From the NCBI GenBank assembly GCA_002269645.1, contig NIVC01001267.1:62001-126000 (forward strand): DNA of 64,000 nt. Reading direction: 5' to 3'. Shown here piece after piece: positions 3,781-54,365 of this stretch. How positions within the stretch are numbered: the stretch's first letter is position 1; each line of letters starts with the position of its first letter. The translations under genes were made by a program, and so were the position numbers. Under the pieces are notes generated by a model. It searched no databases. It saw nothing but the letters and a program-made list of their open reading frames with translations, and was not told the DNA's origin. The stretch comes from Macrostomum lignano. Lineage: Eukaryota.

Positions 3781-3822
3781 CAGTAACCACCTGTTAAACT
3801 GATAAACCTCAATCCCACCAAG

Positions 3823-4223
3823 GTGGCGCACCCGGAACGCGGCGATGCGTGCACGGAGACGATGAGCAGCGCCGAGGCGGAGGCCACCATTGAGTCGTAC
3901 ATGCGCGACGTCAAAGGCAAAGTGAAAGACGAACTGGCCGAAGCTGGCGACGGCTACAACCGGCCGTTCCGCTGCTCGGCCTGCGGTCACCGGTCCAATT
4001 GGAAGTGGGACGTGCGCAAGCATATTCGACAGGCCCATAGCAACCAGCCAGACGCATTTGTTGAGACCCTTAGCAACGAGGACGCTAAGCGGACTTTAGA
4101 CGAGTACATGACTTCGAGGAAGTGCAACGCCTCTGTTGCCAACTCTGGGGCTGTCTGTGGTGTCGCGGCCTCCGCTGCTACCGCTACCGACGCCACGGAT
4201 GCGGATATGGACGATGCTAGCAG
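3823..4223 (+). CDS. C2H2 zinc-finger protein, exon C
   Basis: Acceptor AG at 3821-3822 gives KHIK|VAH, completing the finger. Contains RPFRCSACGHRSNWKWDVRKHIRQAH. Donor CAG|GTGTGT at 4224. Confidence 0.88.
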
Positions 4224-12258: not shown

Positions 12259-12873
12259 CTCAGCAACAGCTAAACCCCCCCGCCCCCAACTCACGCTGTC
12301 ACACGGGCACAACAGTTAAGCAATGTCTTTAATTCTAGTCTCAGTATCGTGTGTAGGAACCACGAGCATGCAAAAGTGCCGTGACTCGTCGTGGCATCCT
12401 GATCACCAGCCGGTTGATGAACTCTTGGGGCAGCTGCTGCCAGGCATTCAGCACCGCCAGTCGCAACTGTTCAGCATTCTGTGGGGCATCCTGCTGAACT
12501 CTTCGCTTTTCAAAGTCCCAGACATGCTCGATGGGGCTCATGTCTGGAGACTTTGACGGCCAGTTCAATGTGCGAATGCCGAGCTGCTCCTTCAGCAGCT
12601 GCACGTGTGCTGCTCGATGTGGCGCAGCGTTGTCGTCTTGAAGCATGCAGTTCTGCGGGCCGCCAAAGGTTGTCGTAGCAAATGGCAGAAACTTTGCAGC
12701 AATGCAGCCACCAGTGGGTTGAGTTGCGCCACCCCCTCCCCAAATCCCCCATGCCGCACTTTGCGCTCACGTCTGGCGGCGGCAACCTTCACACATTTCT
12801 GAGTCACCGATGGCATACAAAACTTTTAGGCCGTGTGACAGCGTGAGTGGGGGGGGGTTTAGCTGTTGCTGAG
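12259..12873 (-). mobile_element. Internally deleted Tc1-family transposon (615 bp)
   Basis: TIR CTCAGCAACAGCTAAACCCCCC..CTCACGCTGTCACACGG at both ends, flanked by TA. Carries only the transposase C-terminus. Confidence 0.92.
12341..12646 (-). pseudogene. Tc1 DD34E transposase C-terminal fragment
   Basis: QDDNAAPH...WPSKSPDMSPIEHVW, with 34 residues between the second D and E. Confidence 0.92.
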
Positions 12874-26207: not shown

Positions 26208-27140
26208 CTAATTATTGCGAGGTTCCGGACCTCTTAGTTGTAGAGGTTTGCGACGACGCTTACCAACTTTCATCGCATCGATTGGTGCCTCTGGGGGTGT
26301 GTCCGGCATTTCTATGCGGAAAAAATTGGGGTCGTAGTTTGGCCTCGGTTGGTTGGACCGATGACAGCCAGCCGCCTGCAGGCGTTTCCTCTTCGTCTCC
26401 GGCGATAGGTTGGCAAACCAACCCTCGCATTGAACGCAGCAGTGCACTTCGAGCTGCATGCGCTCATCCCGCTTTCGAGCCTTAAAAACGCAGTTTTGCG
26501 GAATCCTCGCCTCAGGCAGTCGGTTATAGTCTGCTATGAAACTGTCCGACAACACCATTTGAGCCGGTCCGGTTTGAATGGCTTCAGTGGACATTGCCAA
26601 AGGCCCGTCACGCGACTGCTGCTCATCCTCACTGTCCAGCTGCGCGGCCGGCTGATTCAGCTGACGCCGACTCGCCTGGTTGTCGGCGTACCAGTTCTGC
26701 AGACTCTCGGGGCCCATAGTCTCCGATTCGCAGACTTGCGCACAGTCACGCGACTGCTGCTCATCCTCACTGTCCAGCTGCGCGGCCGGCTGATTCAGCT
26801 GACGCCGACTCGCCTGGTTGTCGGCGTACCAGTTCTGCAGACTCTCGGGGCCCATAGTCTCCGATTCGCAGACTTGCGCACAGTCACGCGCCTGGTTGGC
26901 GGCAATATCGCTGTAGCGAGTGTCCTTGAACGGCCATGCGGACTTTGTCACTTGAGTGCTGGGCACTACATCTGAACGCACGATAGCCCGATGGAAGCGC
27001 ACGTTGCGGCTGGTATCGAACACCGGCGAACCCGGTCGTCCGCTACGCAGGCGCTCCACCTCCGCTCTCAAGGCCCAGTTATCGTGAACCAGCGCTTTGC
27101 AGATTTCGCATGTTGCGGCGTGAGACCAGTGATCCGACAT
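26208..27140 (-). CDS. CtIP/Sae2/Ctp1 (RBBP8)-like protein, 310 aa, intact ORF
   Basis: RKRDERMQLEVHCCVQCEGWFANLSPETKRKRL..CHR..PNYDPNFFRIEMPDT aligns by eye with human CtIP [51 protein letters not shown]. N-terminal CxxC plus short coiled coil; 138-bp internal duplication. Confidence 0.85.
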   Translation of the reverse strand: MSDHWSHAATCEICKALVHDNWALRAEVERLRSGRPGSPVFDTSRNVRFHRAIVRSDVVPSTQVTKSAWPFKDTRYSDIAANQARDCAQVCESETMGPESLQNWYADNQASRRQLNQPAAQLDSEDEQQSRDCAQVCESETMGPESLQNWYADNQASRRQLNQPAAQLDSEDEQQSRDGPLAMSTEAIQTGPAQMVLSDSFIADYNRLPEARIPQNCVFKARKRDERMQLEVHCCVQCEGWFANLSPETKRKRLQAAGCHRSNQPRPNYDPNFFRIEMPDTPPEAPIDAMKVGKRRRKPLQLRGPEPRNN

Positions 27141-28304: not shown

Positions 28305-29180
28305 TCACGCCGCTTTGCCGTACACTACGGCGACCGGCGGCCCGTTGGCGGACCGTTGCACCGCCTCGCCGGACTCCAGTACAGTTTGGCCATATCGATC
28401 GCACACCATGCGCAGGCAGTTGGCCATTGCCCTTTGCGCCTCAGCGGGCGTGTCACCATGGCTGGCGCCTTTTGATCTTTGTTGCGCCAGGTACGCAATC
28501 ATTGTCGTGATGACAATGCGGCAGCGGCGTATCTTGCTGGGCTCCTCGGCCCGTGCCGGTAGCTGCTTGGCCACTCGCTGCAGCATGTCGACCACCACAG
28601 CTTTTTCTGCAGCTTTGTCTGACGCCATGTCGATCCAGGCTGCTGGCCAGTTAAAGCCATTGGCGCACAGTGGTGCACACGATGGACAAACCGATGCCGC
28701 ACTATTTGCTGCGCCAGATGGCGGCTTCGCAGGTGCACAGTCCACTGCACGTTCTGCGCCGGATGGCGGCTTCGCAGGTGCACAGTCCACTGCACGTTCT
28801 GCGCCGGATGGCGGCTGCGCAGGTGGCAGTTGCGCAATGGAAATTTTAATGGCCCGTTGAATATCATCGGGTGATCGGGCTGCCGAACTTGCTTCTGCGC
28901 CGGCTGGACCAGCTGATGGCACCGGGTGGTCCAATCGCAGCAATCGCTTGCTTATGTCACTAGCCTGCATAGCAACCAGGGCCAGTTCGCCATGCAGGCC
29001 ATTGAAGCAATCTCGAAGGTCGCAGAGAGTCGCTTCGCGATCTGATTGTTGCAGCGGCAGCTCCTGTAGCGTACAGATGAGTGCACAGCTGCTATCAATA
29101 TTTTTCGCAATATGTGTGATATTGTCTTTTAAAATGCTTGCAGACCGCATTATTTTATCAAGCGAGTCTGCATCCGCCAT
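28305..29180 (-). CDS. Hypothetical 291-aa protein (N-terminal coiled coil, 15-aa repeat, helical C-terminus)
   Basis: ATG-initiated GC-rich ORF in AT-rich flanks, co-oriented with the other EnSpm ORFs. No motif recognised. Confidence 0.65.
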   Translation of the reverse strand: MADADSLDKIMRSASILKDNITHIAKNIDSSCALICTLQELPLQQSDREATLCDLRDCFNGLHGELALVAMQASDISKRLLRLDHPVPSAGPAGAEASSAARSPDDIQRAIKISIAQLPPAQPPSGAERAVDCAPAKPPSGAERAVDCAPAKPPSGAANSAASVCPSCAPLCANGFNWPAAWIDMASDKAAEKAVVVDMLQRVAKQLPARAEEPSKIRRCRIVITTMIAYLAQQRSKGASHGDTPAEAQRAMANCLRMVCDRYGQTVLESGEAVQRSANGPPVAVVYGKAA

Positions 29181-30865: not shown

Positions 30866-33721
30866 TCATGTGGCAGAAACGCCACGTGAGAGTCCGACAC
30901 GGCACAAGATTTGACGACGGTGGCAACCGGGTCCAAATTCGAAGTAGAACTTGGACACCTCGTCGAAAGGGCTTCGTCGCAATCGACGCACGTGCGCAAG
31001 CGCACTACCGCCAAGTAGGCGACGCCCAGAGAAGCAGTAAAGTGGATTATCGCGTGGCTCGAAGTACTTCTCGGTCAATAAACGACGAACAACCAATTTT
31101 GCAGTGCCATCTGCAACGCGAATCGACTCCACTCGACCAAACTCAAATAATGTCGCGCCGCAATTAAATGCGATGAAGCAGGACGCAGATCTGCAGAATT
31201 GCAACTCAGGTCGAAAAACCTCCAGCTGGCATCCACTGTGAAGTACAGCCCTCGTGAAGCCACGTCCCTGTCGGCGCTCGTACAGCCGCACTCCACCGGC
31301 GGTTGTCAATGCCGGTCTATCTGTCGCCTTTGGGTTGGAGCTATTGAAAGTGTCTCTGACACCCAATAGTGAGCTGAGATAACGAGTCGCCGCACGTCGA
31401 GTTAGCTGCTTTACCAACTGTTTGTCTGAGTGTCGCGTACCGTGAACTCGCGAGCGCAAACGACCATGCATAGACTCGAAAAGTCCGGCTGATACGCGAT
31501 GCAGCGGTCCTAGCAGTAGAGCATACGCACTAAAATGCTCACATACCTGGTGAGCATTATACGTCTGTGCGGCTGCTCCGTAAAGGTTGCGCAGCTCTTT
31601 GTAAAAGTGCTTCAGGTTAGCGTCCGCTCGCAATATCTGCGTGTGCGGTGCGCCATCGAGACAAAGCCAGAAAATAGCAGACGACAGAAGCATAAAGTGC
31701 TGGTAGTAACTGGCATCAAGCAGGCCATCCCCTAGCACCATTGGTCCGTAACAAAGTAGCCACGCTTCGAGCTCGTGCCCACGGAAGTGCCCTAGCTCGT
31801 GCATCGTGCGCGGGGCCCGCTGATGCGACGCCGGCACGTGGATAGTCGCCAGCCTAGTGTTAATATCTGAAAGTCGTCTGGACAAATCCGGTGCGTGACA
31901 CACTCTCATGGGCTTCTTGCCAATTGGCACAAATAACTGCTCCATAGTGCGTCGGACAAGACCAGTCAGCAATTGATGCAGGAAACATGGTGGACAACCT
32001 TGAATGTAGTCAAAGCCCTCAAGCCGATAAAGTGGCGATACCGCTATGACTCCCAGGTTGTGCTCCGCTGCTACCGGTTTAGTGTTTGCCAGCATCACGG
32101 TGTCAGCCAGATTGCGAACTGTTGGCTGCGTGACATTGGCAGCCAGAGCTGCATGCATCGCATCATCCGACATTGCGCATGGATATATTCTCGCACTGCC
32201 CCCACGTTCTGCGTCGTGCAGGGAGATAGTGTAGCAATTGTCGCACCCGTACTCGGCATTAAACTGACGCATGTATTTGGTTTCTGCCCGTTGCGGAGCG
32301 TCTAGAATAAACAGTGGGTGCAGTCTAATTCTTCCACCCTGTTTGCCATCGACACCGGCACCTTTCATGAATTCAATACCAACTGACCGCAGTGCATTCA
32401 GTTGCTCTACTAGCCAAGGGAGATACGCAGTGGAGCGTAGTTTCCTTTTAGCGGACCAGAAGCCGGCTACAACGACATATCTACTCTTCATGTTGTCGGT
32501 TACTTCGTTAATGCTGACATAAACTGGACACATTTCCATAACAGACCTTTTAAAAATTGGAAAGCCATCGATGCACACTGAATACGTGAGGTCACTTCGT
32601 GAGCCCAGTGCAATTGACCGCTTGAATGCCGCATACGCAGTTCCGCTACCCATGTAAAGACGTCCCACGTTCGCCGGCTGATCGACGGGATATATTACGT
32701 GGTCTAGAAGATGGCATTCTTCGATCATCTGTCGTACTTGGCTGCCTATATCCATTCGCCAGAAGTGCCCAACAGACTCTGGCGATTCCAATCTCGCATT
32801 ACAATGCGGACAGTGATCTGGGCGCGGTTGTTGCATCTCGCGATCGCAGCTCAGACAATACACTGAAGGTCTGCATATCGTGTAGGAGTACGGTGTCAGG
32901 TTTAGCAAATTGTCCAGCATATGACGGGTCTGTGGAAACGCAGCATTTACAGGAAGCACGGCCTTTGTGTAGGCAAGCAATTTGTCGACACCATGTACAG
33001 AAAGATTTTGCGCAAAGGCCAGACACTGAGCTAGGGTTCCAATTGCAGCGTATGACACAGTAGCGCCAGGATAGGCGGCCAACTGGCAAAAGTTACGCAG
33101 TTTAGCGTCGTCTGAATCATAATCATCGCCGTCACCGTCATCGCTGTATTCGGCATCGTCGCTAGGCGCTTGGCTGGCAGAGCTTTCGATAGCTTCGCTG
33201 GCATCGCCGGCTTCACTGGCAGTTTCGCTGGCAGAGCTTTCGGCAGCTTCGCTGGCATCGCCGGCTTAACTGGCAGTTTCGCTGGCAGAGCTTTCGGCAG
33301 CTTCGCTGGCGTCGCCGGCTTCACTGGCAGTTTCGCTGGTGGAGGCTTCGGCAGCTTCGCTGGCATCGCCGGCTTCACTGGCAGTTTCGCTGGTGGAGGC
33401 TTCGCCGGTAGATGGCGGTTGTGAAGTAGCTTCGCCGGTAGATGGCGGTTGTGAAGTAGCTTCGCCGGTAGATGGCGGTTGTGAAGTAGCTTCGCCGGTA
33501 GATGGCGGTTGTGGAGTACCTTCGCTACCGATGTCGTCGTCTGGATGACGGCGCTTATTACCACGATTCGTCTGTGGATTTCCAATGGCGGCGCCCATTG
33601 CAGTCGTTCCAGATTGCAACCATCGTTGTCGCCTTTGAAATAGAAGCTGCACTGTCTTGCGTTCTCGAAATCGTTTCACTCTTAAACGATTCATAATGGC
33701 GCGGCGTTGCTGGTCTTCCAT
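30866..33721 (-). CDS. EnSpm/CACTA transposase (Tnp2-like); one in-frame TAA at 33266-33268
   Basis: Motifs YCLSC..CPHC, CIDGFPIF, LDAPQRA..QFNAEYGCDNC, FLHQLLTG, TYNAH, FESMHGRL. ORFs 33266-33721 and 30866-33082 share a frame; the stop is a GAA>TAA change in an ASEAGD repeat. Confidence 0.88.
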
Positions 33722-37320: not shown

Positions 37321-39601
37321 AATATTATCTTAATGTAAATATTGTGGGTGTAAAAAAAGAACATGCGGAAAAGCAGAAATTAGAATTTGAGTAAACAAAC
37401 TTTAAATTATGGTAATGAGGATTATTATTAAGATTAGAGGATTGTTAGCTTTAAGCGATAAAAATACACATTAGAAAAGTAGTATCGAAAGAGTAAAAAT
37501 TATTATATATTTAAACATAAATAATAAACAGTGGAAATTGTTTTTTTATTTTAGTATTAGCATCCATACTTCTTTGTCTGTAATCATTGTACTTTAAATC
37601 AGTAGCTCATTTTGGGATTATAGAATTTAAGTGATTAAGCTGGTGATAATGTATTGGAAAGCCACTTATAAGCAAAATTGATATTAGGTTAGCCAATAGC
37701 CTAATATAATACTAAGATGCACAGGGAAGGCCCCTTGCATGCACGCGCTTGCAGCTCACACTGCTGCTAATATCAGCAGCAGTCTGAAGGGTAAGCTCAA
37801 CCGCCTGCAAGTTAGTGATGTGGCAGTCTATTAGTGTGGCAGTTGCAGGCCTAAAGTAACTCTCATGGAGTCATGGACTCATGTTCTCTATTTTATTGGC
37901 TTGTTTATCTTTTAGCACAGTTTGAGTCTAGCAGTGCTAATATTAAACATATAGTAATCTTTTGTAACACTTGGGGTGAAGCACATTTAGTTCCTGTCAT
38001 ATTTATTGTCATTGAAGTCAAAGATCAGTTATATACCGGTATTGTATCAACGTATCGTATTCTTATTTTTAAAAAATTGGATTCTATATTTGAAACTTTA
38101 ACTGTTGTGCTACCTTAGATACATTTTTTTCTAGTACAAAAGTCCTAAATTTTTAATGTATTGTGATAAAACTTAAAAACTCTCCTGCTTCTATCATGAA
38201 CAAGTTATAAAATCTAAAGGTAAGTTTAGTTTTGTTAATGTTTTTCATAGCTGTTGACAACATGAACTAATAACCTTTTTTATTTAATGTATCATAAATT
38301 TATGATTTCTAAAGTTCATATGAGAATGCAGCGATACTATTGTTATTGTAAACTGTCATGCATTTAACACAGTTTTAAACTAAAGTAAAATTATTTAGAC
38401 ACTTTCTCAAGACCTCTAGCAGCACATTGGCTGTGCAATTTTATAATTTTTGGAGGCTAATATCATTAAAACATTACACTGCGGAAACAGGAAAAAAGTC
38501 ATTTTTGCATCACAAAATCAAACGATAGCATTTGATCTTGGTTAATGAAGATTACCATTCTTTAAATTTAGGATGCAAAAGATGTCAGTCTGTTGTATTT
38601 TATACATGTAAGTTGGGTTTAAAAAGTTTTTTCCTAATATATATTAGGAATATATATCTATATTTACTTATTTTTTAGATTTTTACAAGCCAAAAGTTAT
38701 AATTACTCACTTGTAACATTATTTAGCTAAAATATTTTGTTTTGCTTCATCTTGAAGCAATTATATATATAATGCTGAAAATAAAGTGAAAAAGTGACAC
38801 AAAAATAAAATAAATTCAGAGTATAAAAAATGAAAACTAGGAAGATGAAACTTATTAACATGCAACTATTAGTATATAAAATACAGCAGAGTAACATGTT
38901 GTGCACGCTAAATTAAAATAATGGTAGTCCTCATCCTCCAGAATGAAATGCTTTGGATAGTATATTTTGTGCTTAAAACATATTCTCCTCTATGCAGTGT
39001 ATTTTTACAGAAATCAGCCTCCAAAACAATTACAGGATCTCTGAATCTGACTGTATCGTGGGTTGCTTTCACAAGCTCGAAAGTTCACAACATCGAAACC
39101 AGTTATTTTCATAAGCTCGAAATTTCAGAACCTCGAAAATTTCAGCAGCCGACTTCATAAGCTCGAAATTTCTTTCACAAGCTCGAAATTTCACAACCTC
39201 GAAAACCATTTTAGCAGCCACTTTTACAAACCCAAAACTTCATAAGCTCGAAATTTCATATCCTCGAAAATTTTAGCCAGTGACTTCATAAGCTCGAAAT
39301 TTCACAACCTCGAAAACCATTTAAGCAGCCGACTTCACAAGCTCAAAATTTAATATCCTCGAAAATTTTAGCAGCCGACTTCATAAGCTCGAAAGCTAGT
39401 GTGAAAAATACAAATACAGTACATTTTCGAGGTTGTGAAATTTTGAGCTTGTGAAATCGCTTGCTAAATTTTTTCGAGGATATGAAATTTCGAGCTTATG
39501 AAGTTTCGGGTTTGTGAAAGTGGGCTGCTAGTGGTAGGTGAACTGATCAGGCGGATCAGCCACGTCGCCGATTTTCAGGCGGAAGAGGCGGGAAGTCTCG
39601 G

Positions 39602-41751
39602 CTAGCAAGTGGCCGAACTCGCTGCCTGTTCGGCAGCTGATGTCTGGCCTTGCTTCCGTTTCTTTTTCCTCTTCGCCTTCTGCGCCCCATCTTCAGTCGC
39701 ACCAGACTGCTCCGCCTCCGAAGTTGTCGCAGAGGACGGTGCCGCACGTTTCGCAGCGCCAGCACCAGTCGGGGCGGGATTGCCCGTCTGGCGGGTGACA
39801 GTTGTCTCTGGCTCGCTGTCGGAGTCCGAGGTGGACGCAGAAGCTTCTGGCAAGGGCGGCAGGGCTCGTGTCCGGCCAACAGAATTCGCCAACGCCGTCT
39901 CCGAAAGCCGCGCGTATCTCTGACTCACGCTCTCGAACCGAGAATCGAGCTCTTTGAGTAGAGCTAGTTGCGAGCTCTCTGGGGCAGGCGCTGACAAATC
40001 TGGTGCAGCAGCACCCGCCTTGCGGGCCTTGGCCCGCTGGCGTGCCGCTCTGGCCTTCTCCAGCCTCTCCTCCTCCAGTTTCGCGGCTCTGCGCAGAGCC
40101 TCGTTCTCCTGAGCGATGCTACGATTTAGCTCGGTCAGCTTGTTGCTCAGCTTGACCTTCATCGGCCCGATGTCCGTCTTGTGCAGGCCATAGCCTTTTG
40201 CGGACAGATCCAGGTCGCGCTGCGTCTGGACCAATTCCTCCCTCATCGAATTAAGGTTCTCGAGGTAGGAGCGGATATCTGCCTCCTTTCTGCTCCGGTC
40301 CGCGGTAGCGCAATTGCCGACCCAGGGAACCGGCAGTGGTATCCCTGGGCGCTGTCCGTTTAAAGGCTGCTGCTTAGTCGGAGGCCCAGCCGGCAGGTCT
40401 ACATAACTCGGAAGAACTGCTTCCGGCTCGTAGTCGGTATAATCCACCACTCGATAATCCGAGTCTCTCGCTCTAGCTACTAGGGGCCGATTGGCAACGA
40501 AGCCCCCCCCCCCGAGAGTCCCGGAAACGACGCTTAGCTCGGCGTCCAAGGGTTCGCTCAGAAGCGTCGCCTTCGTCTCCGGGATCACAGGGCGGGGCCC
40601 AATCCGGGTCGTTCAAATCGACCTCGAAGCCATAAGCTTCGAAGAACTGTTCCGACTCAAGCGAATGTCATTTGCCGTCGAGCTCGAAGGCCGTGTAGTC
40701 GTTATCCAGATTGTAGAAATCGACCTTACAGCCACGGCGAGCCAGCTTGCCAAGGGCGTTCATGAGCCAGTCGTCAGTGTCCTCGTTCCGCACAGCGAGG
40801 TGGTGGTTCAACGCGACTCGAAGGAAGTCCGCGCTCATCCCATAGTTGAGACCTTCCTTGGTCATCAGATGCACTCCGTAGACGACTCCAGTCGGAGCGC
40901 CGTAGACTCCCCCTGAACAGCCAGGAAGAGTCGAGCCGTCAGACTTGTAGCGGCATCTGATCCGCTTTCCTAAGAGTGCCAGAGCTCGTAATCGGGCCAT
41001 TCTTGCCAACCAGGGACCACATGCTGGTAAAAGCAGCGCTCCTCAACGGAGTGACACGAGCGACCGAAACTCCGAGCCGAGACATCAGGTCAGGCGTAAC
41101 AGGAATCGCCACTACATCGGCGTCCAGATAGATGGAGTTCTCAGTGTGCAAGTTAACCGAGGTGCCAGTCGGGCCAGTTGCAGTTATGTAGGCCGCTTTG
41201 GAAACCACGGCTTCCACGACATGCAAGGGCGCGATGATAAAGGGCTGGCCACAGGCGTCAAAACGAAAACCGTTGCCAGCCGCCCCGTTAGGCCTAGAGA
41301 GGGCAACTAGGCACTTCGGCATGCAAGCAGTGGACCTGAGATCACTCCCAGGAACCAGAGCTTCCAAGCGGTACTTGCCAAGAGCGGGAAACGGCTTAAC
41401 TCCGGCCAAGGTTTTCACCTGGACCATAGGGCCCTCGTCTAACGGGTGGACAGTCCGGGCCTCCCTTTCGGCGGCAATTCTAGCCCTCCTAGCGACGTAC
41501 CAGGCCCACAGGGCGCAAAGGCCTTCCAAGGCCAGAGCGAATAGCACGTACAGGAACGCGAAAGCTAAAATAAATAATAAGATGACTCGACCGTGTCCTA
41601 GTAGTTCCTGCGCCTGGGACAGGTCTTGATTCAAAACCGCTCGAACAACTCCGATGGAACAGAGAATAGAAACGGTTAAGATCGCCACAAAAGTGGACTT
41701 GACTGCAGATTGCAGAGTAGCAAAGATAGTTGTAAGGCCTAAGCCCGCCAT
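39602..41751 (-). pseudogene. Sobemo-like P2a polyprotein (TM, chymotrypsin-like Ser protease, VPg-like, basic C-terminus); two frameshifts and one stop
   Basis: Triad APLHVV / DADVVAI / STLPGCSGG..VYGVHL. Reading through the TGA at 40668-40670 gives DWAPPCDPGDEGDASE. The frame changes in the G11 run near 40503-40513. Confidence 0.78.
40320..40364 (-). promoter_or_regulatory. -1 ribosomal frameshift signal (U UUA AAC plus stem-loop)
   Basis: Heptamer at 40358-40364 is in frame with P2a (P-L-N). CCCAGGGA/TCCCTGGG 8-bp stem lies 7-8 nt downstream. Confidence 0.75.
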
Positions 41752-41778
41752 CGCAACTTTTGCAGGAGGTGCTGCTGC

Positions 41779-41934
41779 TCACGCTGCAGGCACCCTACCG
41801 GCGAGGTCAAGCGCGAACTCGGCGTTATGTCGACTGTCTGCTGGCTGACGCCGGCGCCCCGGACACTGCCGGTGGCGCGGCCTTTGTTCGCGCCCAAGCC
41901 ATGAATCGCGCCCTGTGACGCTGACTTTTGTCAT
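41779..41934 (-). pseudogene. Small 51-aa ORF upstream of P2a (possible viral ORF1)
   Basis: ATG 18 nt after the putative 5' end. Positional evidence only. Confidence 0.3.
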
Positions 41935-42994
41935 CCTGACAGCGTATTTTGTTGTTGTTGTTGTTGCTGCTAGAATGGTTTTCGAGGTTGTGAAATTTCG
42001 AGCTTGTGAAATTTCGAGCTTATGAAGTCGGCTGCTAAAATTTTCGAGGTTGTAAAATTTCGAGCTTATGAAGTTTCGGGTTTGTGAAAGAAAGTGCTTT
42101 TCGAGGTTGTGAAATTTCGAGCTTGTGAAGCGACCCCTGTATCGTATGTATGTATAGCGTCCTGATATAATTCTGCTCTGGGGCGTAGCCAAATAATGGG
42201 GACACTTAGGGGGGGGGATTTTTTCATTGCCTTTGTTTTTTGCTTCCTTCGCTAACATTGCAGTTAAATTTGTCTCTGTCCTGTCCCCCCTGACGACTGA
42301 CGTAAATCTGCCGGTCATCGAAATTTCTCTGAAAGATGGTTTCCTCAAAGTTCCTTGCATATGGTACATTGCATTGCATTCTGCATCAAAGGTTTATAAA
42401 TTCTGTATGTAAAAAGTAGATATTCTTTAATTATTTTCATTGTTTATCATTTTTACAGCGCTGTTTTGCCTTAACTACCTACAGAAAGATGAATTTTACG
42501 GTTGCTATAACAACAAAAAATAAACAATAAAAGCAAAAACTAAAGTGCCAATAAATTATTCTTCTTAGACAGAGCAGCACTTGGTAAAAGTTTTTGCCTG
42601 CTAAAACATTTACCCAGCGCTTATGTGCATGTAGATAAGTAGCTGCTGCAAAAGCCGTCTGTCTGTCTGTTGATCTGTCTGTATGACAAAGCTGTTAAAA
42701 GTCCTTTTGCAGCTTTACTGTCTCGGCTTTTTGCAGTCTCAGCTGGGGCTTAGGGTTAGGGCCCTAATTAGGCGTTCAGACGTTTACATGAACTTTTATG
42801 GTCTTTCTAGACTAGACGCAAGAGTCTAGTCTGTTGAGTCATACTTTAGCACCGTCGTATACTGTCGTACTGTATATATTTATGTATTATGTATTATGTA
42901 TTATGTATATATATATATATTAATGTTAGAGTTAGAAGTTTATATCGTCTAGTCTAGTCTAGACAGACATATATACCCTATATATATATATATA

Positions 42995-44520
42995 CTCAAT
43001 ATGTATGTATAATTCTGGGAACTGTCCGTATGTGAATTACGAATTTGTATGTAATTCGAATTCTGTTCGGGTATTCAAAAAGTTTTGGCAACAGGCTACT
43101 AAAATCTAGTGCAAGCTCATTATTCTAAAAGTAAGGGTTTACAGTCCTTCTATGTAGTCTCCGCCGCGCTCTATGCACTTCTGATGCCTCCGTAGCCACG
43201 AATCAAAGGCGCCGCGGTACTCCGATTCAGTGAATGCCCTCAACTCTGAATTGATAGCGCGCGCCAGGTCTTGCGGCCTCTGAAATTGGCGCCCAGCCAG
43301 CCTCTCGGTCAGTTTCGGGAAGGCCCAGAAGTCGCACGGAGCCAAGTCCGGGCTGTAGGGCGGGTGGCGAACGGTTTTCAGCCGGTTCTCCTCCAGAAAT
43401 GCTGAAGTCATCGCCGCAGTATGGCTTGACGCATTGTCATGGTGAAGGTGGATGCGACCTGGCTCCAAGCGCGTGCGTTGATTTTGCCGCACGAAATCAA
43501 CGACAGCTGGCAGGGCAGTGCTGGTGTAGAAGCTGGCGTTCACATTCTGGCCTTTGGGCACCATGACAACAGCTACTGGGCCACAGATGCTGAAGAACAC
43601 AACGAACATCTGCTTGCGTGAGCGAAATCCTGATCGCAGAACTGTTGGACGCTCTTCATCTGCGCCAATCCAAACCTTGTTCTGGCTCTTGTTGGGCACC
43701 TGGAAGTAGTAAAACCACTTCTCGTCACCGGTGACAATGTCAGAGAGGCGCTTGGTGCCGCCAGAACCGAAGCAGCGCAAGAACTCCTTACTGCAGCGAA
43801 CCCGCTCCTGGCGCTGCTCCTCAGTGAGCTGATGTGGCACCCAACGAGCTGTGATCTTCCTGAGCCCCAGCTGCTCATGCAGGATGGTGAAAACGCTGCC
43901 CTCAGATATGTCAAGTGTCTGGCTCAGCATGGCAACAGAAATGTTTGGGTCCTCAGCCACCAGCGATTGCACAGCGTCAATGTTGCTCTTGGTCACGGCT
44001 GTGCTCGGCCTCCCCGATCGAGGGTCGTCACAGAGGCTGCTCCTGCCGGCGCCAAAAGCCTCAATCCATCGCGCAACGGTGCGATAAGATGGAGCTTGAT
44101 CCCCTATCACCTGTGCTAAGTCGGCATGGATTTTGGTGGCGTTTTCTCCAAGTTGTGCGCGCATGAAGATGTAGAAGCGCGTGTTTTCTGAGCTGATATT
44201 TTCCATAATTTGTCAGAAGCTGAAACGTAGGTATGGTTAGGTGTGAATTGTGCAATAACGGGTGAAGCCATTGAGCTGAAAATTTATATGGTGGTCTCAG
44301 GCATGTTACTAAAAATATCCCTAAAATTTAGTGTGTTTTGCTTGAGCCAAAGTATATCTGCATATGCAGTTGCCAAAACTTTTTGCTCTGCTCTAATATA
44401 TATACTTGCGCTCGGCAGGAAGGAAAAAGATTTCGTATATAGCCGCGAACAGAATTCGAATTACATACAAATTCGTAATTCACATACGGACAGTTCCCAG
44501 AATTATACATACATATTGAG
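42995..44520 (-). mobile_element. Full-length mariner transposon (1526 bp)
   Basis: 75-bp TIRs (42995-43069, 44446-44520); TA on the left, TT on the right; intact transposase. Confidence 0.95.
43139..44206 (-). CDS. Mariner DD34D transposase, 355 aa, intact
   Basis: HTH N-terminus, WVPHQL, VTGDEKW, HHDNASSH, YSPDLAPCDFW; 34-residue D-D spacing. Confidence 0.96.
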   Translation of the reverse strand: MENISSENTRFYIFMRAQLGENATKIHADLAQVIGDQAPSYRTVARWIEAFGAGRSSLCDDPRSGRPSTAVTKSNIDAVQSLVAEDPNISVAMLSQTLDISEGSVFTILHEQLGLRKITARWVPHQLTEEQRQERVRCSKEFLRCFGSGGTKRLSDIVTGDEKWFYYFQVPNKSQNKVWIGADEERPTVLRSGFRSRKQMFVVFFSICGPVAVVMVPKGQNVNASFYTSTALPAVVDFVRQNQRTRLEPGRIHLHHDNASSHTAAMTSAFLEENRLKTVRHPPYSPDLAPCDFWAFPKLTERLAGRQFQRPQDLARAINSELRAFTESEYRGAFDSWLRRHQKCIERGGDYIEGL

Positions 44521-47408: not shown

Positions 47409-48589
47409 CTGGAAAAGAAACCAGAGTTGAGTGAAAAGGACCATTTTTCGCGCCATCTTGAAACCATAATGATGAATTGCGTCACTTAAAACATAATGCT
47501 AGTGTATGTCTAGAAACCATAGTGCACATGTCCTCCTCATACTACTTTTAGTAGCCTACTCTTCCTAGTTGTCTCGCAGGTCACTCAGATACTCAGGGTG
47601 AACCTCCTGGATTTAAAGGTCTGTGTTCAGTATATTGCTTGTGTATAGGAAAAATTTGTGTGCTTTGGGAGCACTAGAAACGGTGGGAAAGAGAAAAGTG
47701 GATGGCTATGCAATCCTACTAAATTAGTTACGCCATGAAGATTTTAACATCAAGATTCGCATAAGGTAATTTTTTAAATCTAAATGGCCTAAAAATGCAT
47801 ATTTCCTTGGTTGTTACACTGCGGCAGACTGTGATGGAGCTGGAGATACACAAATTCCTCTTAGGGCTGCTGATTGATTAGTTTCAATATTTAAGTTTTA
47901 ATTTCAAGTTGAAATAGGAAGTTTCAACTCTGTAACTCAACCGAAAAAGAAACTGTAAGCATGTGAAGTTTGTCTGCTTTTTCTGTTGTTTTTTCCACTC
48001 ACTCACTCATTCCCCCAGCCCAGACGAAGGGTCAGGCGATAGGGCTGAATGTACATAGCAAATGTACAGTGTTTTGGAATAACTTTTTAATAGCCTTCTG
48101 TGTACCCCCGCGCGTGGAAAGGCTACGTTTAGCCATGACAGTTTAGTGAGAAATTCTAACCACTGTCCTCTGTATTGGCAAACTCTGCAGCAGTTTAACA
48201 GTGGATGGCAAATCGAGGGAATCCAGCATGGTTTGTAAAAGCGAAAGATTTATGAAAAGGCGATGCAATGCAATACAACCCTACTAAATTAGTCACACCA
48301 TGGAAATTTTAGGTTTCTCTTAAAAGTACTTTAAATTTTAAATTTCCTCCTAAGAAATGCGTATTTCCTTTGTTGTTAGACTGATGCAGACTGCAGTGGA
48401 GCTAAAAATACACAAATTCCTTTCAGGACTGCAAATTGGCAAGAAAGATGACATGATAAAAGCATGAGAACAGCCATGAGAGTACTACGTCCCACAAACT
48501 GGCTTTCTAAGCAGGAATGGGCAGACTTTTACTTCAAAAGCCAGATAAAGAATCCAGTATCCAGCTCATGTGCGGGCCAGATGAGAGTG

Positions 48590-49386
48590 GAAAGGAGAAG
48601 GAATAGACTATTAGAAGAGAGGAGAGGCGAGAGGGGGATATGAGAAAACATGGAATATAAGAGGAGAGACAAGTGGTGAGGAGAGAGCAGAGAAGAAGGG
48701 AGGAAGAAGCGAGAGGAGGGGAGAAAGGAGGGAGAGAAAAGAGTAAAGGTGAGAAGAGGGGAGAGATGAGACAGAGGATCGATGAGAGGAGAGTAGAGAA
48801 GAGTGAGAAGAGAGTAGAGATGAGAGAGCAGAAAGAAGATGACAGAGGGTCAAGAGGAGAGGAGAGATTAGAGAGGAGAGAGTAGAAAGGATAGAAAAGA
48901 GAGGAGATAAGAGGGGGAGAGAAAGGGTGAGAAGAGAAGAGATAGAGATAAGAGAGGGGTGTAAGAAGATGGGAGAAAGGAGAGATGAGAGAGTAAAGGG
49001 AAGAGGAGGAGAGAGGAAAAAGATGAGATTGTAGAGATGAGACAGATGAAAGAGGAGATGAGAGATGAAAAAAAGTGAGAGGAGAGTGCAGAGAGACGAG
49101 AGAAGATAATAGAGGAGAAAGAGTATAGAAGAGGGAAGAGAAAAGAAGGGAGGAGTCAGAAGAGGTGAAAGAGAAGAGTACAGAGGGGATAAGTGAGAGA
49201 ACGTATAAGAGAGTAAAGATGACAGATGAGAGAGCAGATGAACAGACGAGAGATGGGAGAGTACAGAGAACAGAGGAGAGATAAGAGAGAAGAGATTACA
49301 GAGACTAGAAGAGAGAGGAGAGACAGGGAGAGAGAAGAGGAAATAGGAGAATGAAGAGGGGAGAGAGTAGAGAGAAGAAGAGAGAT

Positions 49387-49450
<64 letters not shown>

Positions 49451-49975
49451 AAGCGCAGAGCAGATAGAAACGAGAAGAGATAAGAGAGAAAAGATAAAAG
49501 AAGAGAAATGAGAGATGAAGAGAGAGAAGAGAGGTGAGGGAAGAGACGAGCGACGAGGGGAGAGAGAAGATATAAAACAAGAAAAGAGATGAGAGGAAAG
49601 AGAGAGAGGAAAGAGGTGAGGGAAGAGACGGGAGAGAGGAGAGAGAGAGGAAAGAGTAGAGAGGAGAGATGAGAGATGAGAGGAGAGAGTTAAGAGAAGA
49701 GAGAAAAGAATAGAGAGGAGAAGGAAGAGACGAGAGAAGAGGAGGAGAGAGGAGAGAGGAGAGGAGGGAGAAAACGAAAGAGTAGAGAGGAGAGAGGAGA
49801 GCAGAGAGAAAACGAAAAGTAGAAAGGAGAGAGGAGAGGAGAGAGAAAAGAATAGGGAAGAGAGATGAAACAGAAAAGAGATGAGGGAAGATACAAGAGA
49901 AGAGAGGAGAGAAGAGAGAGAAGAGAGGAGAGACGAGGGATGAGAGAGAAGAAAGGAAAGAGACGATAGAAATTT
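48590..49975 (+). repeat. GA-rich low-complexity satellite
   Basis: Almost pure purine strand; the Ser/Leu ORFs on the minus strand are artefacts. Confidence 0.92.
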
Positions 49976-52854
49976 TAAAGGATCCAAGGGACATAGGTAG
50001 AGTCAGGGAGAGGCCAGAGTTTGCCAATATATGTTGAGTCAGACAGACATTGCCTGGCATTCTGTGGAGTACCCCAGCAAACAATAACAACATTTGCCTC
50101 AAACCCTAATTTTACACGAATGTGCTCCATTTTATGTCTACCTCTATCCTACTATTAATTTGTTTGTGTATGGCCTTAGATTTCAGAATACATGCAAAGT
50201 AGTTCCGGGGATTAGAATTCCCCGGGTTCAAAATCCGCGGGTTTCAACAGCTTGTATATATATAGAAGAGAGGAGAGGCGAGAGGTGTAAGAGAAAAGAT
50301 AAAAGATAGTAGGAGAGACTAGAGGGTGAGGAGAGAGCAGAGAATAGGGAATAGATCCACCTATAATAAATGTCTAAGTCTGTTGTAACTAAATGCGCAT
50401 AGCTTAAAACTCACTATATATGGCTTATAACTAAGCAAATATTGGTTATTATGAAGCGTATTATCAAAGTAAGACTCTAGGAAGTCGAACAATTTTAAAG
50501 TTCAAAATGCCATCCACAATTTGTGCAAGCGAAAATCACAATCAAAGTATTTCAGGGCCAAGTGCCAAAGCCCCATTGGGTGGGTGCCAAAAAAGGGGCA
50601 TCAGGGCATTTTGGGGTCTCCAAAGGAGAGGGCACTATACCTTTGCTTAGAGTTGCTTAAAGGTGGTAAAACGTGGCGCCAAGTCTTATGACGCTCGTTG
50701 AAATAATAATCTAATATATTCCATTGAAAAAACTTGATATCGTGCGCTTGCAGCGAAACTGAATTTTACTAAGAATTATTCAAACAGTGGCATTTTCGCT
50801 TTAAAATTATTCGATTCCTTGAACTTACCTGTATTTAAAGACAAATTAAAAATAACCAAGTATAGCCGTTAAGCTTGCGCTCAAATATTTATACTCTATG
50901 CAGGCCTATGCTTTAAATGAGAGACAAGGATAGCCTTTTCTTTCCAGCTCTTTATATAAGCTCCTTGATACTGGTGAATAAAGCCACAAATTAACCTATA
51001 CCGTGGGTGGTGGCCGTCGGTGAATCAAAAAGCGAGAGGCTTATTAATCAAAGGGAGGGGTTGGCTTGCCTAACTCACCGTGGGAGAATTCTCATTGGCC
51101 CGCGTGCTCAGTTTTGGGGTGGGTGTAGAACGGTGGCCCTCTCTCAATGTACGATAACTCCTAGTAGGCTGCTTGCAAGTCAGCGTTCAAACTTTTATGG
51201 GAAAACTATTGACTATAAATAATATACTAGAATTTAGAATTATAATTTATAATGTATATTAGTATATATAGAATATATACGAGCGTATGGTCAGACACAC
51301 AAGACAGACAAATCTGCTGGCTCATCAGTTCAAGTGCTTGGAAAGTCAGTTTGTCATTGTGGGGAACAGAATACTCTCAAGTCGCAATCAGATAGCTCGT
51401 AGTAGGACAGTAGTTGAATTCCTTACTGAACTGTCAAGGCTTAACGTTACCAAACGTTAGGCTTGACAGTGAAGGCTTGACAGTGAAAATTGGATTGTGT
51501 CCAATTTGAAGAGGATTGGTAAAAGTGGAGCGACGCTATAGAGGATTTAGTGAAATTCTTGCGAAACTTGACAAGCAAATTGTCTCTACCGAATTACAAC
51601 TTCCTGAGTTCGGGTAGCCAAATTGCTGCTTGCCGGTTTTGTTTGGATTCTCGCTAGCAGATTTCGGCTAGCTAAATCCTCGCTAGCAAAATTCCTGCTA
51701 GCAAAGTTCATAGACCCGCTTAGCACAAGCTACTGAAAACCGCGTATATTGAAACCGTGGAATTCCAATCCCCGAAACTACTTTTGCATGTTTTCCAAAA
51801 TCTGAAGTCATATTCCAACAAAAACTTGTCAATAGTTAAAATGGCTGGCGTGCTGCGCAGAATGTCAGGAAATGTCTGTCTGACTCAAGAACATGTATTG
51901 GCAAACTCTGGCCTCTGCCTCTCTCACGTCCCTCGGATTCTTCTCTCGTTGATTTTCCCTCACATTTATCACCTGTCTGTCTGCCCGTTTATCTGTCCTT
52001 CTCCGTGTTTTTCTGTCTCTCTGTGTGTCTGTACAGGTGTCTGGACTGTACATGTATGTGTCCAAAAAATTAAAATTTGTGTTGAAAAACAAATGGTGTC
52101 CTATGGCAACTTACCAATGATGGACTTACCAATGATGGGCCTCGCCCTCGCCCCACGCCTCGCCCTCGCCCTCGCCCTTGCCCTCGCCCTCCGCCTCGCC
52201 CTTCGAAGCCAGTATTTCTGTAAAGTTCAAAAGTCGCAATCTAAGTTTTTTTGAGAGGCGCGAAATTTGTTCTATCAAGATATTTCGGGTGGGGCGGGGA
52301 TGGGACGTGAATAAGGTCTCTGATAGCGAGAACATTAGAACCAGAGAACAAGTGTAAGTTTTACTCTGAGAACTGTTGATTATTTCATTTATAGTAAATT
52401 GCTTATTAACTCTAAACTGCTCAGCTTTTGATGCACAGAGACGTTATACATTAACTATAGTTACGTATAAGGCTATTCTGAGATTAACATGAGGGAATCA
52501 GATAGGAAGATATGACATTCAGGGATAAGGATGTGAGAATAAGGAAATCTGAAGATTCGGGAATGCCTTCTCTGACCAGCTACTTCAAGTAGAAATGTAA
52601 ATCGTAAATGGAGGAAATGAGAATGAATATTTAGGAATATACAATTTAGCATTCAATATCTTACCCAGCCAGCTGGCCCAGCAGCTGGGCCTGCGCCAGC
52701 TGTAGTTGGGCGACAGTGTGGATCTGGAAATAAATTAATATTTACACAAAAATAAGGTTGCTGAATTTAATTCTGACTAATGTCCCAGTGCCTGTCTATC
52801 AATCTGAAAGCTCAGTACACAGAGTGACTTATTCTAGCTTGAGATTCTGTCTGT

Positions 52855-54035
52855 GTCTGAGATCTGCGATCGGGAATCTGAGATCTGGGATCTGGAACCT
52901 GAAATCTGGAATCCGAGATCTGGGATCTGGAACCTGAAATCTGGATCTGGGATCTGGAATCTGAGATCTGGGATCTAGAACCTGAAATCTGGAATCTGAG
53001 ATCTGAGATCTGGAATCTGAGATCTGAGATCTGGGATCTGAGATCTGGGATGGATCTGAGATCTGGGATCTGGAAGCTGAAATCTGGAACCTGAAATCTG
53101 GAATCTGAGATCTGGAATCTGAGATCTGGGATCTGAGATCTGGGATGGATCTGAGATCTGGGATCTGGAACCTGAAATCTGGAATCTGAGATCTGAGATC
53201 TGGAATCTGGGATCTGAGATCTGAGATCTGGAATCTGGGATCTAAGATCTGGGATCTGAGATCTGGGATCTGGGATCTGAGATCTGGGATCTGAGATCTG
53301 AGATCTGGGATGGATCTGAGATCTGGGATCTGGAGCCTGAAATCTGGAATCTGAGATCTGGAATCTGAGATCTGGGATCTGGAACCTGAAATCTGGAATC
53401 TGAGATCTGAGATCTGGGATCTGAGATCTGGGATCTGAGATCTGGGATCTGAGATCTGGGATCTGAGATCTGGGATCTGAGATCTGGGATCTGAGATCTG
53501 GGATCTGAGATCTGGGATCTGAGATCTGAGATCTGGGATGGATCTGAGATCTGGGATCTGGAACCTGAAATCTGGAATCTGAGATCTGGGATCTGGAACC
53601 TGAAATCTGGAATCTGAGATCTGAGATCTGGAATCTGGGATCTGGGATCTGAGATCTGGGATCTGAGATCTGGGATCTGAGATCTGAGATCTGGGATGGA
53701 TCTGAGATCTGGGATCTGGAACCTGAAATCTGGAATCTGAGATCTGGAATCTGAGATCTGGGATCTGAGATCTGAGATCTGGGATCTGAGATCTGGGATC
53801 TGAGATCTGGGATCTGAGATCTGAGATCTGGGATGGATGGATCTGAGATCTGAGATCTGGAACCTGAAATCTGGAATCTGAGATCTGAGATCTTGAATCT
53901 GAGGTCTGGGATCTGAGATCTGAGATCTGGGATGGATCTGAGATCTGAGATCTGGAACCTGAAATCTGGAATCTGAGATCTGAGATCTTGAATCTGAGGT
54001 CTGGGATCTAAGATCTGAGATCTGAGATCTAGATA
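52855..54035 (+). repeat. GATCTG(A/G) heptamer satellite with GAACCTGAAATCTGGAATCT variants; second block at ~54595-54795
   Basis: Direct inspection. Confidence 0.93.
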
Positions 54036-54079
54036 GCAAAGATATATATAGAAATGATTTAGACAGCAAATCCACGTAC

Positions 54080-54365
54080 TAATTTTTCTCTCTTGCGGAC
54101 GCGGGCCCAGCGGCGGCCCGCCCGCTTCCGGACTGCCGCCTCCGCCGCTGCCTCCGAGGTTGCCTGTGCCTCCGCCGCTGCCTCCGGAGCTGCCTGCGCC
54201 TCCGCCGCTGCCTCCGGAGCTGCCTGTGCATCCGCCGCTGCCTCCGGAGCTGCCTGTGCCTCCGCCGCTGCCTCCACCTCCGCGGCCCAGTCAGCAGGGC
54301 CTGGATGGGCCGCCTCTGGGGCCTTTTTTTGTTTATTTTTCGCTTTCGGTAGTTTCTTGCCATTG
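54080..54365 (-). CDS. Candidate internal exon (K-rich, then EAAAEAQAAP repeats)
   Basis: Acceptor ATTTGCAG before 54365; open frame NGKKLPKAKNKQKKAPEAAHPGPADWAAEVEAAA..; donor TTA|GTACGT at 54079. Confidence 0.45.

What the first reader, a model, noticed from the sequence alone, without database searches (positions are those of the whole stretch)
41934..41975. Junctions suggest LINE-type reverse transcription of the viral antigenome
Seen: the insert is flanked by a 7-bp direct repeat GCTGCTA, which occurs once in the uninterrupted MITE repeat unit. On + it ends ..TTTTGT followed by (TGT)n, reading ACAAAA on the viral sense strand just upstream of the first ORF. The far end stops before any recognisable RdRp. 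Known: sobemo- and polerovirus genomes begin ACAAAA; TPRT gives a TSD, short-repeat 3' tails and 5' truncation. Inference: the minus-strand replication intermediate was primed at its 3' end and truncated, which explains why the genomic 5' end is kept and RdRp/capsid are lost.
Basis: inference. Interest (0 to 1): 0.75.

Follow-up and report, generated by a model that had tools for sequence, protein, structure and literature searches.

The report
Sobemo-like viral fossil with retroposon-style junctions
A 2.4-kb broken piece of a sobemo-like RNA virus sits inside a host foldback transposon, and its ends (a duplicated 7-8 bp target site and a TTG-repeat tail) look like the work of a host LINE-type reverse transcriptase copying the virus's minus strand, a signature rarely seen outside mammals.

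Summary
A GC-rich insert (39531-41965, 2435 bp) interrupts the right arm of a 635-bp foldback MITE. GCTGCTA flanks it on both sides (8 bp if the next G is counted). The MITE's own opposite arm has that site once and has no TTG/CAA run. So the duplication and the (TTG)6 tract arrived with the insert.

On the minus strand the insert carries a 197-nt leader and one broken polyprotein gene. Its only detectable relatives are protease ORFs on two ~2.5-3.1 kb RNA contigs, each followed by an RdRp. A profile of these hits solved sobemovirus serine proteases. No RdRp is present anywhere in the window.

The insert has no LTRs and no terminal inverted repeats. The tail's orientation makes the antisense (antigenomic) strand the copied template. 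Papers report (TTG)n tails and short TSDs for RTE-clade LINEs.

Three points remain unproven:
- No LINE and no second TTG tract occur in the window, and the host genome could not be searched.
- The claim that the true viral 5' end is kept rests on a low-complexity hexamer that partly overlaps the repeat.
- The two relatives' contig ends do not resemble the insert's end.

Verdict: the target-primed reverse transcription (TPRT) reading is partly supported. This is a new variant of a known kind.

The parts
39060..42136 (.). Foldback-type MITE (635 bp without the insert). It has long inverted arms built of 16-bp sub-repeats. The insert lies in the right arm.
   Evidence: arms 39063-39400 and 39423-42147; the 16-bp unit occurs 19 times here and nowhere else in the window.
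39051..39059 (.). Left copy of the 9-bp direct repeat CTGTATCGT flanking the MITE (the MITE's own target-site duplication).
   Evidence: Read; the same 9 bp occur at 42137-42145.
42137..42145 (.). Right copy of the MITE's 9-bp direct repeat.
39524..39530 (.). Left copy of the insert's target-site duplication GCTGCTA (the G at 39531 is ambiguous).
41966..41972 (.). Right copy of the target-site duplication GCTGCTA (the G at 41973 is ambiguous; G41966 is shared with the TTG run).
39531..41965 (-). Virus-derived insert (endogenous viral element), 2435 bp. GC is 58.5% against 27-36% in the flanks. Viral sense is the window's minus strand.
41949..41966 (+). (TTG)6 tail at the 3' end of the plus-strand (antigenomic-sense) copy.
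   Evidence: absent from the matching site of the opposite MITE arm.
41752..41948 (-). 197-nt leader upstream of the polyprotein ATG. It holds a 52-codon upstream ORF (ATG at 41934), a small terminal hairpin, and two copies of the A-rich hexamer (41947-41952, 41926-41931).
   Evidence: Hairpin z = -2.2; 6 of 200 shuffles fold as well.
39602..41751 (-). Polyprotein gene (N-terminal hydrophobic segment, chymotrypsin-like serine protease, long C-terminal part). It is broken: three pieces in three frames, so at least two frameshifts and probably one in-frame stop.
39531..40118 (-). Reading frame -1 relative to the last polyprotein piece. It is open to the very end of the insert apart from one stop, and may be the non-catalytic start of the RdRp ORF.
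   Evidence: weak match, E 0.002 in a two-contig search, to the start of the RdRp ORF of L002; no Pfam hit.

Best explanation
The insert is an endogenous viral element from an unknown sobemo-like (+)ssRNA virus of an invertebrate-type animal host. It was most likely written into the genome by the target-primed reverse transcription (TPRT) machinery of a host non-LTR retrotransposon whose RNAs end in a trinucleotide repeat (RTE-like).

Proposed sequence of events:
1. The endonuclease nicked the minus strand at the left (lower-coordinate) edge of the GCTGCTA site.
2. The freed 3' end annealed to a UUG-type 3' tail.
3. cDNA was copied from the viral antigenomic (minus) RNA, starting at or near the end that is complementary to the genome's 5' end.
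4. Synthesis stopped, or the template ended, about 70 nt past the polyprotein stop.
5. A second nick 7 bp away, followed by fill-in, gave the duplication.

Shown: the duplication, the new tail, the orientation, the viral protease homology and the missing RdRp. Inferred: the enzyme family, the strand actually used, and the exact start point. Whether the enzyme began directly on the viral RNA or jumped onto it after copying its own tail is left open.
For: - One-copy empty site and no TTG run in the symmetrical arm of the same MITE.
- Identical 7-8 bp repeats directly abut the compositional boundary.
- The pure (TTG)6 is unique in the 64 kb.
- One base of overlap at each junction (G41966, G39531), as expected from annealing or microhomology joining.
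- No terminal inverted repeats or LTR-like ends in the insert.
- Viral origin: tblastn of P0003 and P0004 hits only the insert (E 6e-11 and 4e-10). Both proteins sit on 2.5-3.1 kb RNA contigs followed by RdRP_1/RdRP_4 ORFs. Their joint profile hits solved sobemovirus proteases 6ff0, 6fez and 1zyo (E 5e-11 to 2e-4).
- Literature: RTE-clade LINEs and their SINEs end in (TTG)n with TSDs of 8-20 bp (PMC3747384, PMC5850137). Insect RTEs end in other trinucleotide repeats, with LINE TSDs of 10-15 bp and SINE TSDs of 5-18 bp (PMC3272025).
- The leader (197 nt) is at least as long as those of the two relatives (78 and 134 nt), so the insert is not visibly short at that end.
Against: - No reverse-transcriptase ORF and no other TTG-tailed element was found in the window.
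- No independent empty copy of the MITE could be fetched.
- The documented (TTG)n-tailed RTEs are from plants. The insect RTEs read here carry (TGA)n.
- Seven bp is at the short end of the reported TSD ranges.
- LINEs with repeat tails usually need their own 3' UTR on the template, which a viral RNA lacks.
- A short TTG seed could have expanded by slippage after insertion.
Confidence: 0.55

Rival explanations
1. Template-switch chimera. A host LINE or SINE RNA with a (UUG)n tail was the primed template. After copying the tail, and perhaps its last 20-40 nt, the reverse transcriptase jumped to a viral minus-strand RNA. The viral end at the junction is then arbitrary, not the true terminus.
For: - The last ~35 nt before the tail are less GC-rich than the rest of the insert and form a small hairpin. 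LINEs with repeat tails typically carry such a hairpin just before the tail (own knowledge).
- A second copy of the A-rich hexamer lies 21 nt further in (41926-41931) and could mark the real viral end.
- LINEs with repeat tails normally require their own 3' end (PMC3747384).
Against: - The 21 nt before the tail match nothing else in the window.
- A terminal hairpin is equally expected at a viral RNA end.
- No host LINE 3' end was available for comparison.
Confidence: 0.2
2. Capture of viral cDNA by end joining. Viral DNA made by any cellular reverse transcriptase (for example that of an LTR retrotransposon) was ligated into a staggered double-strand break in the MITE. Fill-in of the overhangs gave the 7-8 bp repeat. 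The TTG run is filler, or a microsatellite that grew later.
For: - Viral integrations in arthropods are usually ascribed to LTR-retrotransposon reverse transcriptases and recombination (own knowledge).
- Katzourakis and Gifford saw no TSD or tail at insect viral insertions (PMC2987831).
- The window is rich in cut-and-paste transposons (hAT, mariner) whose transposases make staggered cuts.
- An 8-bp repeat fits the hAT size.
Against: - No retrotransposon sequence is attached to the insert, and there are no TIRs.
- End joining rarely gives a clean duplication together with a pure 18-nt repeat exactly at one junction.
- The run is in the orientation and position expected for a retroposon tail.
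Confidence: 0.13
3. The repeat, read as (CAA)6 on the viral sense strand, is part of the virus's own 5' leader. The plus strand, or a DNA copy of it, was inserted, and the tail is not a retroposon tail.
For: CAA-repeat leaders are known in some plant RNA viruses as translation enhancers (own knowledge). The repeat merges smoothly into the A-rich start of the leader.
Against: - The leaders of the two relatives have no such repeat.
- A plus-strand template would put the priming end at 39531, where there is no tail of any kind.
- The run is unique in the 64 kb and sits exactly at the junction.
Confidence: 0.05
4. The insert is not viral. It is a host or transposon gene with a chymotrypsin-like protease.
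For: There is no Pfam hit and no close homologue. Library-wide E-values of the two relatives are only 5e-4 and 6e-4.
Against: - The only collinear relatives lie on short RNA contigs with an RdRp next door.
- Their profile hits sobemovirus proteases specifically.
- Composition is foreign to the locus.
- The layout (leader, hydrophobic N-terminus, protease, overlapping -1 frame) is that of sobemo-like RNA1.
Confidence: 0.03

Closest known systems
LINE-1-mediated insertions of bornavirus and filovirus mRNAs in mammals (endogenous bornavirus-like (EBLN) and filovirus-like elements)
   Same: A non-retroviral RNA virus sequence is flanked by a target-site duplication and a retroposon-type 3' tail, and the far end is truncated (PMC2987831, PMC3205384).
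   Different: In those cases the tail is poly(A), the template is a polyadenylated viral mRNA of a minus-strand virus, and the host is a mammal. Here the tail is (TTG)6, the template would be the non-coding antigenome of a plus-strand virus, and the host is an unidentified invertebrate-type animal. PMC2987831 states that no such features were seen at insect viral insertions.
RTE-clade LINEs and their SINEs with (TTG)n or other trinucleotide tails
   Same: A labile trinucleotide 3' tail, short TSDs and frequent 5' truncation (PMC3747384, PMC5850137, PMC3272025).
   Different: No RTE sequence (endonuclease, RT or 3' UTR) is attached to the insert or present in the window. Published (TTG)n examples are from flowering plants. 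The 7-8 bp TSD is at the low end of reported ranges.
Invertebrate sobemo-like viruses (Solemoviridae-related), RNA1 segment
   Same: A short leader, then an ORF1 with a hydrophobic N-terminus and a serine protease, with an RdRp ORF overlapping or following it in another frame. The segment is about 2.5-3.1 kb (PMC12994069 describes the same layout).
   Different: The closest proteins are only 29-33% identical. The polyprotein is longer (about 716 codons if read end to end, against 435 and 596). The RdRp is missing and the gene is broken.
Viral insertions associated with LTR retrotransposons in mosquito piRNA clusters
   Same: A viral fragment embedded among transposon debris in a repeat-rich region.
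   Different: Those insertions are joined to LTR-element sequence and lack TSDs and tails (own knowledge). Here the insert is clean, has a TSD and a tail, and lies inside a DNA-transposon MITE.

Membership tests
Sobemo-like virus-derived element | Chymotrypsin-like serine protease of the sobemovirus type (His, Asp, Gly-x-Ser-Gly) | tested here: met
   His and Asp columns are invariant in the alignment with P0003 and P0004. The Gly-x-Ser-Gly motif in the next piece aligns to that of P0003. The profile hits 6ff0, 6fez, 7yzv and 1zyo. The window pieces alone give no Pfam or PDB hit, so the link is transitive.
Sobemo-like virus-derived element | Relatives are RNA replicons with an RdRp downstream of the protease ORF | tested here: met
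   L001 and L002 are 3094- and 2463-nt contigs from RNA-derived assemblies. Their second ORFs match RdRP_1 and RdRP_4.
Sobemo-like virus-derived element | RdRp reached by a -1 frameshift from the polyprotein | tested here: inconclusive
   The -1 frame is open to the insert's end apart from one stop. It weakly matches the start of L002's RdRp ORF. There are no RdRp motifs, and the slip site was not examined.
Sobemo-like virus-derived element | Conserved 5'-terminal motif of the genome | tested here: inconclusive
   PMC4488728 documents such a motif for most plant sobemoviruses. An identical hexamer occurs twice in the first 40 nt of the insert and nowhere else in sense. One copy overlaps the repeat, and the two relatives' contigs lack it.
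Retrocopy made by LINE target-primed reverse transcription | Target-site duplication absent from the empty site | tested here: met
   The opposite arm of the same MITE shows one copy. No independent empty copy could be obtained.
Retrocopy made by LINE target-primed reverse transcription | 3' tail (poly(A) or simple repeat) next to the downstream TSD copy | tested here: met
   (TTG)6 at 41949-41966 directly abuts the right TSD copy.
Retrocopy made by LINE target-primed reverse transcription | 5' truncation of the copied RNA | tested here: met
   The copy ends about 70 nt past the polyprotein stop, and the RdRp catalytic region is absent.
Retrocopy made by LINE target-primed reverse transcription | A partner LINE with the same tail in the host genome | not testable with these tools
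   No RT ORF was found in the window. The host genome is not in the searchable collections.
RTE-clade-mediated retroposition | Template shares the LINE's 3' UTR end | not testable with these tools
   No host RTE sequence was available. The 21 nt before the tail are unique in the window.
Foldback/MULE-like MITE (the host of the insert) | Long inverted arms made of tandem sub-repeats, terminal inverted repeats, 9-bp TSD, no coding capacity | tested here: met
   The 9-bp repeat CTGTATCGT lies at both ends. Superfamily assignment from TSD length alone is inference.

The most novel reading that the evidence does not exclude
The 3' end of this virus's antigenome, being the complement of an A/C-rich genomic 5' terminus, itself reads like the first units of a (UUG)n LINE tail. 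A host RTE-like reverse transcriptase therefore accepted it directly as a template. It primed on the exact terminus and lengthened the tail by slippage. This would explain both why the minus strand was copied and why the genomic 5' end is preserved to the last base. It would also predict a strand- and end-biased fossil record for viruses with such termini.
Probability: 0.2. Interest if true: 0.75.

Novelty: new variant of a known kind. Interest (0 to 1): 0.55.

Why it matters
How non-retroviral RNA viruses enter invertebrate germ lines is mostly argued from association with LTR retrotransposons. Clean junctions are rare. A classic survey found no TSD or tail at any insect viral insertion (PMC2987831).

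This locus has base-exact junctions because the target is a symmetrical MITE that carries its own 'empty site' in the other arm. If the TPRT reading holds, three things follow:
- Non-poly(A) LINEs can also endogenise viral RNA.
- A replication intermediate (the antigenome) of a cytoplasmic plus-strand virus can serve as template.
- Such fossils may preserve the true genome terminus of an extinct or unsampled virus.

The locus also adds a very divergent sobemo-like lineage, with no relative above about 33% protein identity among 15 billion proteins.

Tried and rejected
- Pfam, PDB sequence and word-indexed protein searches with the window's own ORF pieces found nothing. Only the exhaustive HMMER scan found relatives. 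Two of its four hits (P0001, P0002) are multi-stretch low-complexity matches and were discarded.
- The profile search A1 in the indexed database returned only P0004.
- IMG/VR scans with the A1 and A2 alignments gave no confirmed relative.
- Two metagenome scans, one for the empty site and one for a generic MITE unit, gave 0 hits.
- Exact-product look-ups of the polyprotein N-terminal piece and of the neighbouring mariner transposase found no record.
- Host identification with a zinc-finger ORF gave only distant hits; the best named one is a flatworm protein at 54% over 31% of the query.
- The search for reverse-transcriptase ORFs covered 30 of the larger ORFs and found only hAT, mariner/DDE_3, BEN and C2H2 domains. 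ORFs shorter than about 90 codons and low-complexity ORFs were not scanned.
- Rfam on 38900-42300 gave only sub-threshold microRNA-precursor-like hits on the MITE hairpin.
- Terminal inverted repeats or LTR-like ends in the insert: none.
- A first hexamer count used coordinates one base off. It was redone and one search is disregarded.
- The hexamer that the finding quotes under known viruses' names was not used as a search pattern. Counts were made from the window's own letters by coordinate.

Full report
**1. What is at the coordinates**

The window is a repeat-rich stretch of an animal genome. It holds:
- a hAT transposase fragment, an intact-looking mariner transposase, a BEN-domain ORF (below Pfam's cutoff) and several large ORFs with no family match;
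- a C2H2 zinc-finger gene and a second DDE_3 fragment.

Between 39060 and 42136 lies a foldback-type MITE. Its two long inverted arms are built from a 16-bp sub-repeat. That sub-repeat occurs 19 times here and nowhere else in the window. The MITE is bounded by a 9-bp direct repeat, CTGTATCGT.

Its right arm is interrupted by a 2435-bp block (39531-41965). The block is 58.5% GC against 27-36% in the flanks.

**2. The junctions**

GCTGCTA occurs immediately left of the block (39524-39530) and immediately right of it (41966-41972). The next base is G on both sides, so the direct repeat is 7-8 bp.

The last 18 nt of the block on the plus strand are a pure (TTG)6 (41949-41966). Its final G doubles as the first base of the right repeat copy. 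This is the only run of three or more TTG or CAA units in the 64 kb.

No second copy of the MITE exists in the window, and two metagenome scans found none elsewhere. I therefore used the MITE's own symmetry as the empty-site control:
- I joined the two flanks with a single GCTGCTA and aligned them to the reverse complement of the left arm.
- The alignment runs collinearly through the junction over about 300 nt.
- The left arm has the heptamer once, in the same distinctive context, and has no CAA/TTG run.

The heptamer recurs in other sub-units of the MITE (42031, 39212, 39369). But both flanks match one and the same unit of the opposite arm. This argues against a deletion-plus-insertion between two units. 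So the duplication is a true target-site duplication, and the TTG tract came in with the insert or grew from it.

**3. What the insert is**

Read on the minus strand, the insert has three parts:
- a 197-nt leader;
- a polyprotein gene from the ATG at 41751 to the stop at 39602;
- about 70 further nucleotides.

The gene is broken. It is in three pieces in three different frames, so there are at least two frameshifts and probably one in-frame stop.

The pieces have no Pfam or PDB match of their own, and there is no close homologue in the indexed protein collection. An exhaustive HMMER scan of 1.84 billion representatives gave two collinear relatives, P0003 and P0004. They are 29-33% identical over about 130-140 residues (E 5e-4 and 6e-4 library-wide). 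In tblastn against the window they hit only the insert (E 6e-11 and 4e-10).

Evidence that these relatives are viral and of the sobemo type:
- Each lies on a short RNA-type contig (3094 and 2463 nt) and is followed by an ORF matching RdRP_1 and RdRP_4. This is the RNA1 layout described for invertebrate sobemo-like viruses (PMC12994069).
- A profile of the three proteins hits the solved sobemovirus serine protease and protease-VPg chains 6ff0, 6fez, 7yzv and 1zyo (E 5e-11 to 2e-4).
- The catalytic His and Asp are invariant in the alignment.
- The Gly-x-Ser-Gly motif lies in the next piece, in another frame, and aligns to that of P0003.

I therefore accept 'sobemo-like', through transitive and distant homology.

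No RdRp-like sequence exists in the insert or anywhere else in the window. The -1 frame at the far end is open to the last base apart from one stop. It gives a weak match to the start of L002's RdRp ORF. The copy therefore probably ends inside the non-catalytic start of the polymerase gene.

**4. How it most likely got there**

The insert has no terminal inverted repeats and no LTR-like ends. This speaks against a DNA transposon or an integrase. Four features together are the signature of target-primed reverse transcription (TPRT):
- a short duplication;
- a simple-repeat tail abutting one copy of it;
- one base of overlap at each junction;
- truncation at the other end.

The tail is at the 3' end of the plus strand, which is antisense to the viral genes. 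The copied RNA would therefore have been the antigenome.

The literature supports the type of tail:
- RTE-clade LINEs and their SINEs end in (TTG)n and have TSDs of 8-20 bp (PMC3747384; PMC5850137, which argues that the plant RTEs came from arthropods).
- Insect RTEs end in other trinucleotide repeats; the LINEs have TSDs of 10-15 bp and their partner SINEs 5-18 bp (PMC3272025).

It remains inference. I found no reverse-transcriptase ORF in the window among 30 ORFs scanned, and I could not reach the host genome.

**5. Is the true viral 5' end kept?**

This is the weakest link.

A review documents a conserved 5'-terminal motif for most, but not all, plant sobemoviruses (PMC4488728, section 3). 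An identical hexamer lies at the border between the repeat and unique sequence (41947-41952). A second copy lies 21 nt further in (41926-41931). There are no other sense-strand copies in the A-poor 2.4 kb. From the insert's base composition I estimate 0.28 copies expected over the whole insert, and about 0.005 in any 40-nt stretch. That clustering is suggestive.

Several points weigh against it:
- Four of the six letters of the junction copy are supplied by the repeat itself. Given a CAA run, only two further A's are needed.
- The two available relatives lack the hexamer entirely, and their contig starts are unrelated. Those starts may be incomplete.
- The last ~35 nt fold into a small hairpin (z = -2.2). 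A hairpin there fits a viral promoter end, but it equally fits the 3' end of a repeat-tailed LINE picked up before a template switch.

One point is compatible with a complete end: the 197-nt leader is at least as long as the relatives' leaders (78 and 134 nt).

My estimates:
- TPRT in the broad sense: about 0.55.
- A template-switch chimera: about 0.2.
- Direct priming on the exact terminus: about 0.2. This is a sub-case of the broad TPRT reading, so it is not added to the other figures.

**6. Rivals**

- End-joining capture of viral cDNA at a staggered break would need the duplication, the pure tail and its orientation to coincide (about 0.13).
- A viral CAA-repeat leader with plus-strand insertion leaves the supposed priming end without any tail (about 0.05).
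- A non-viral origin is contradicted by the relatives' genomic context (about 0.03).

**7. Comparison and novelty**

LINE-mediated endogenisation of RNA viruses is established for mammals, with poly(A) tails and viral mRNAs as templates (PMC2987831, PMC3205384). The same survey noted that no such features were apparent at insect insertions. Insertions of the Luteo-Sobemo clade are tabulated for arthropods in PMC6955108, although the extracted table was hard to read.

What is unusual here:
- a non-poly(A) trinucleotide tail;
- an antigenomic template from a plus-strand virus;
- base-exact junctions that can be verified against the MITE's own symmetry.

I rate this a new variant of a known kind. 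Interest is moderate to good, limited by the missing host-genome evidence.

Noticed in passing
window 39051-42145: The 'MITE' is a foldback-type element: arms of about 270-340 bp made of 16-bp tandem sub-repeats, terminal inverted repeats, and a 9-bp target-site duplication (CTGTATCGT). This resembles Foldback/MULE-type elements. Its hairpin gives sub-threshold Rfam hits to MITE-derived microRNA precursors (MIR1435, 54.6 bits against a gathering score of 94).
   Followed up: partly
window 43139-44206 (-): An uninterrupted 355-codon mariner/Mos1-type transposase ORF (HTH_48, DDE_3, Transposase_1 domains) lies 1 kb from the insert. It may be a recently active DNA transposon. A second DDE_3 fragment is at 12344-12766 (-).
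   Followed up: partly
window 18590-19723 (-): hAT-family transposase C-terminal part (dimerisation domain, E 6e-13).
   Followed up: no
window 30866-33265 (-): A large open frame of 738-799 codons with normal amino-acid complexity has no Pfam match at all. The ORFs at 26208-27140 (-) and 28305-29180 (-) also have none and contain internal duplications. Their nature is unknown; they could be unclassified transposon or viral genes.
   Followed up: partly
window 1373-6301 (+): C2H2 zinc-finger gene with Gln-, Pro- and Ala-rich tracts. Its best named relative is a flatworm (Cichlidogyrus) protein at 54% identity over a third of the query, then fish and tick proteins. The host is therefore an animal poorly represented in the databases, not obviously an insect.
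   Followed up: partly
window 48000-50100: A block with extreme strand asymmetry (GC skew 0.63, AT skew 0.54). It is low-complexity and gives Ser/Leu-rich pseudo-ORFs on the minus strand.
   Followed up: no
window 1-1330 and 52800-54300: Two long tandem-repeat arrays read as repetitive ORFs on the minus strand: a repeat of about 15 codons at 1-1330, and a short peptide-like repeat at 52.8-54.3 kb. The second draws many spurious coiled-coil Pfam hits.
   Followed up: no
L001 (SRR13494436) and L002 (SRR12685017): The two nearest relatives are themselves unnamed, very divergent sobemo-like RNA1 contigs, each seen in a single sequencing run. Neither has relatives in IMG/VR.
   Followed up: partly
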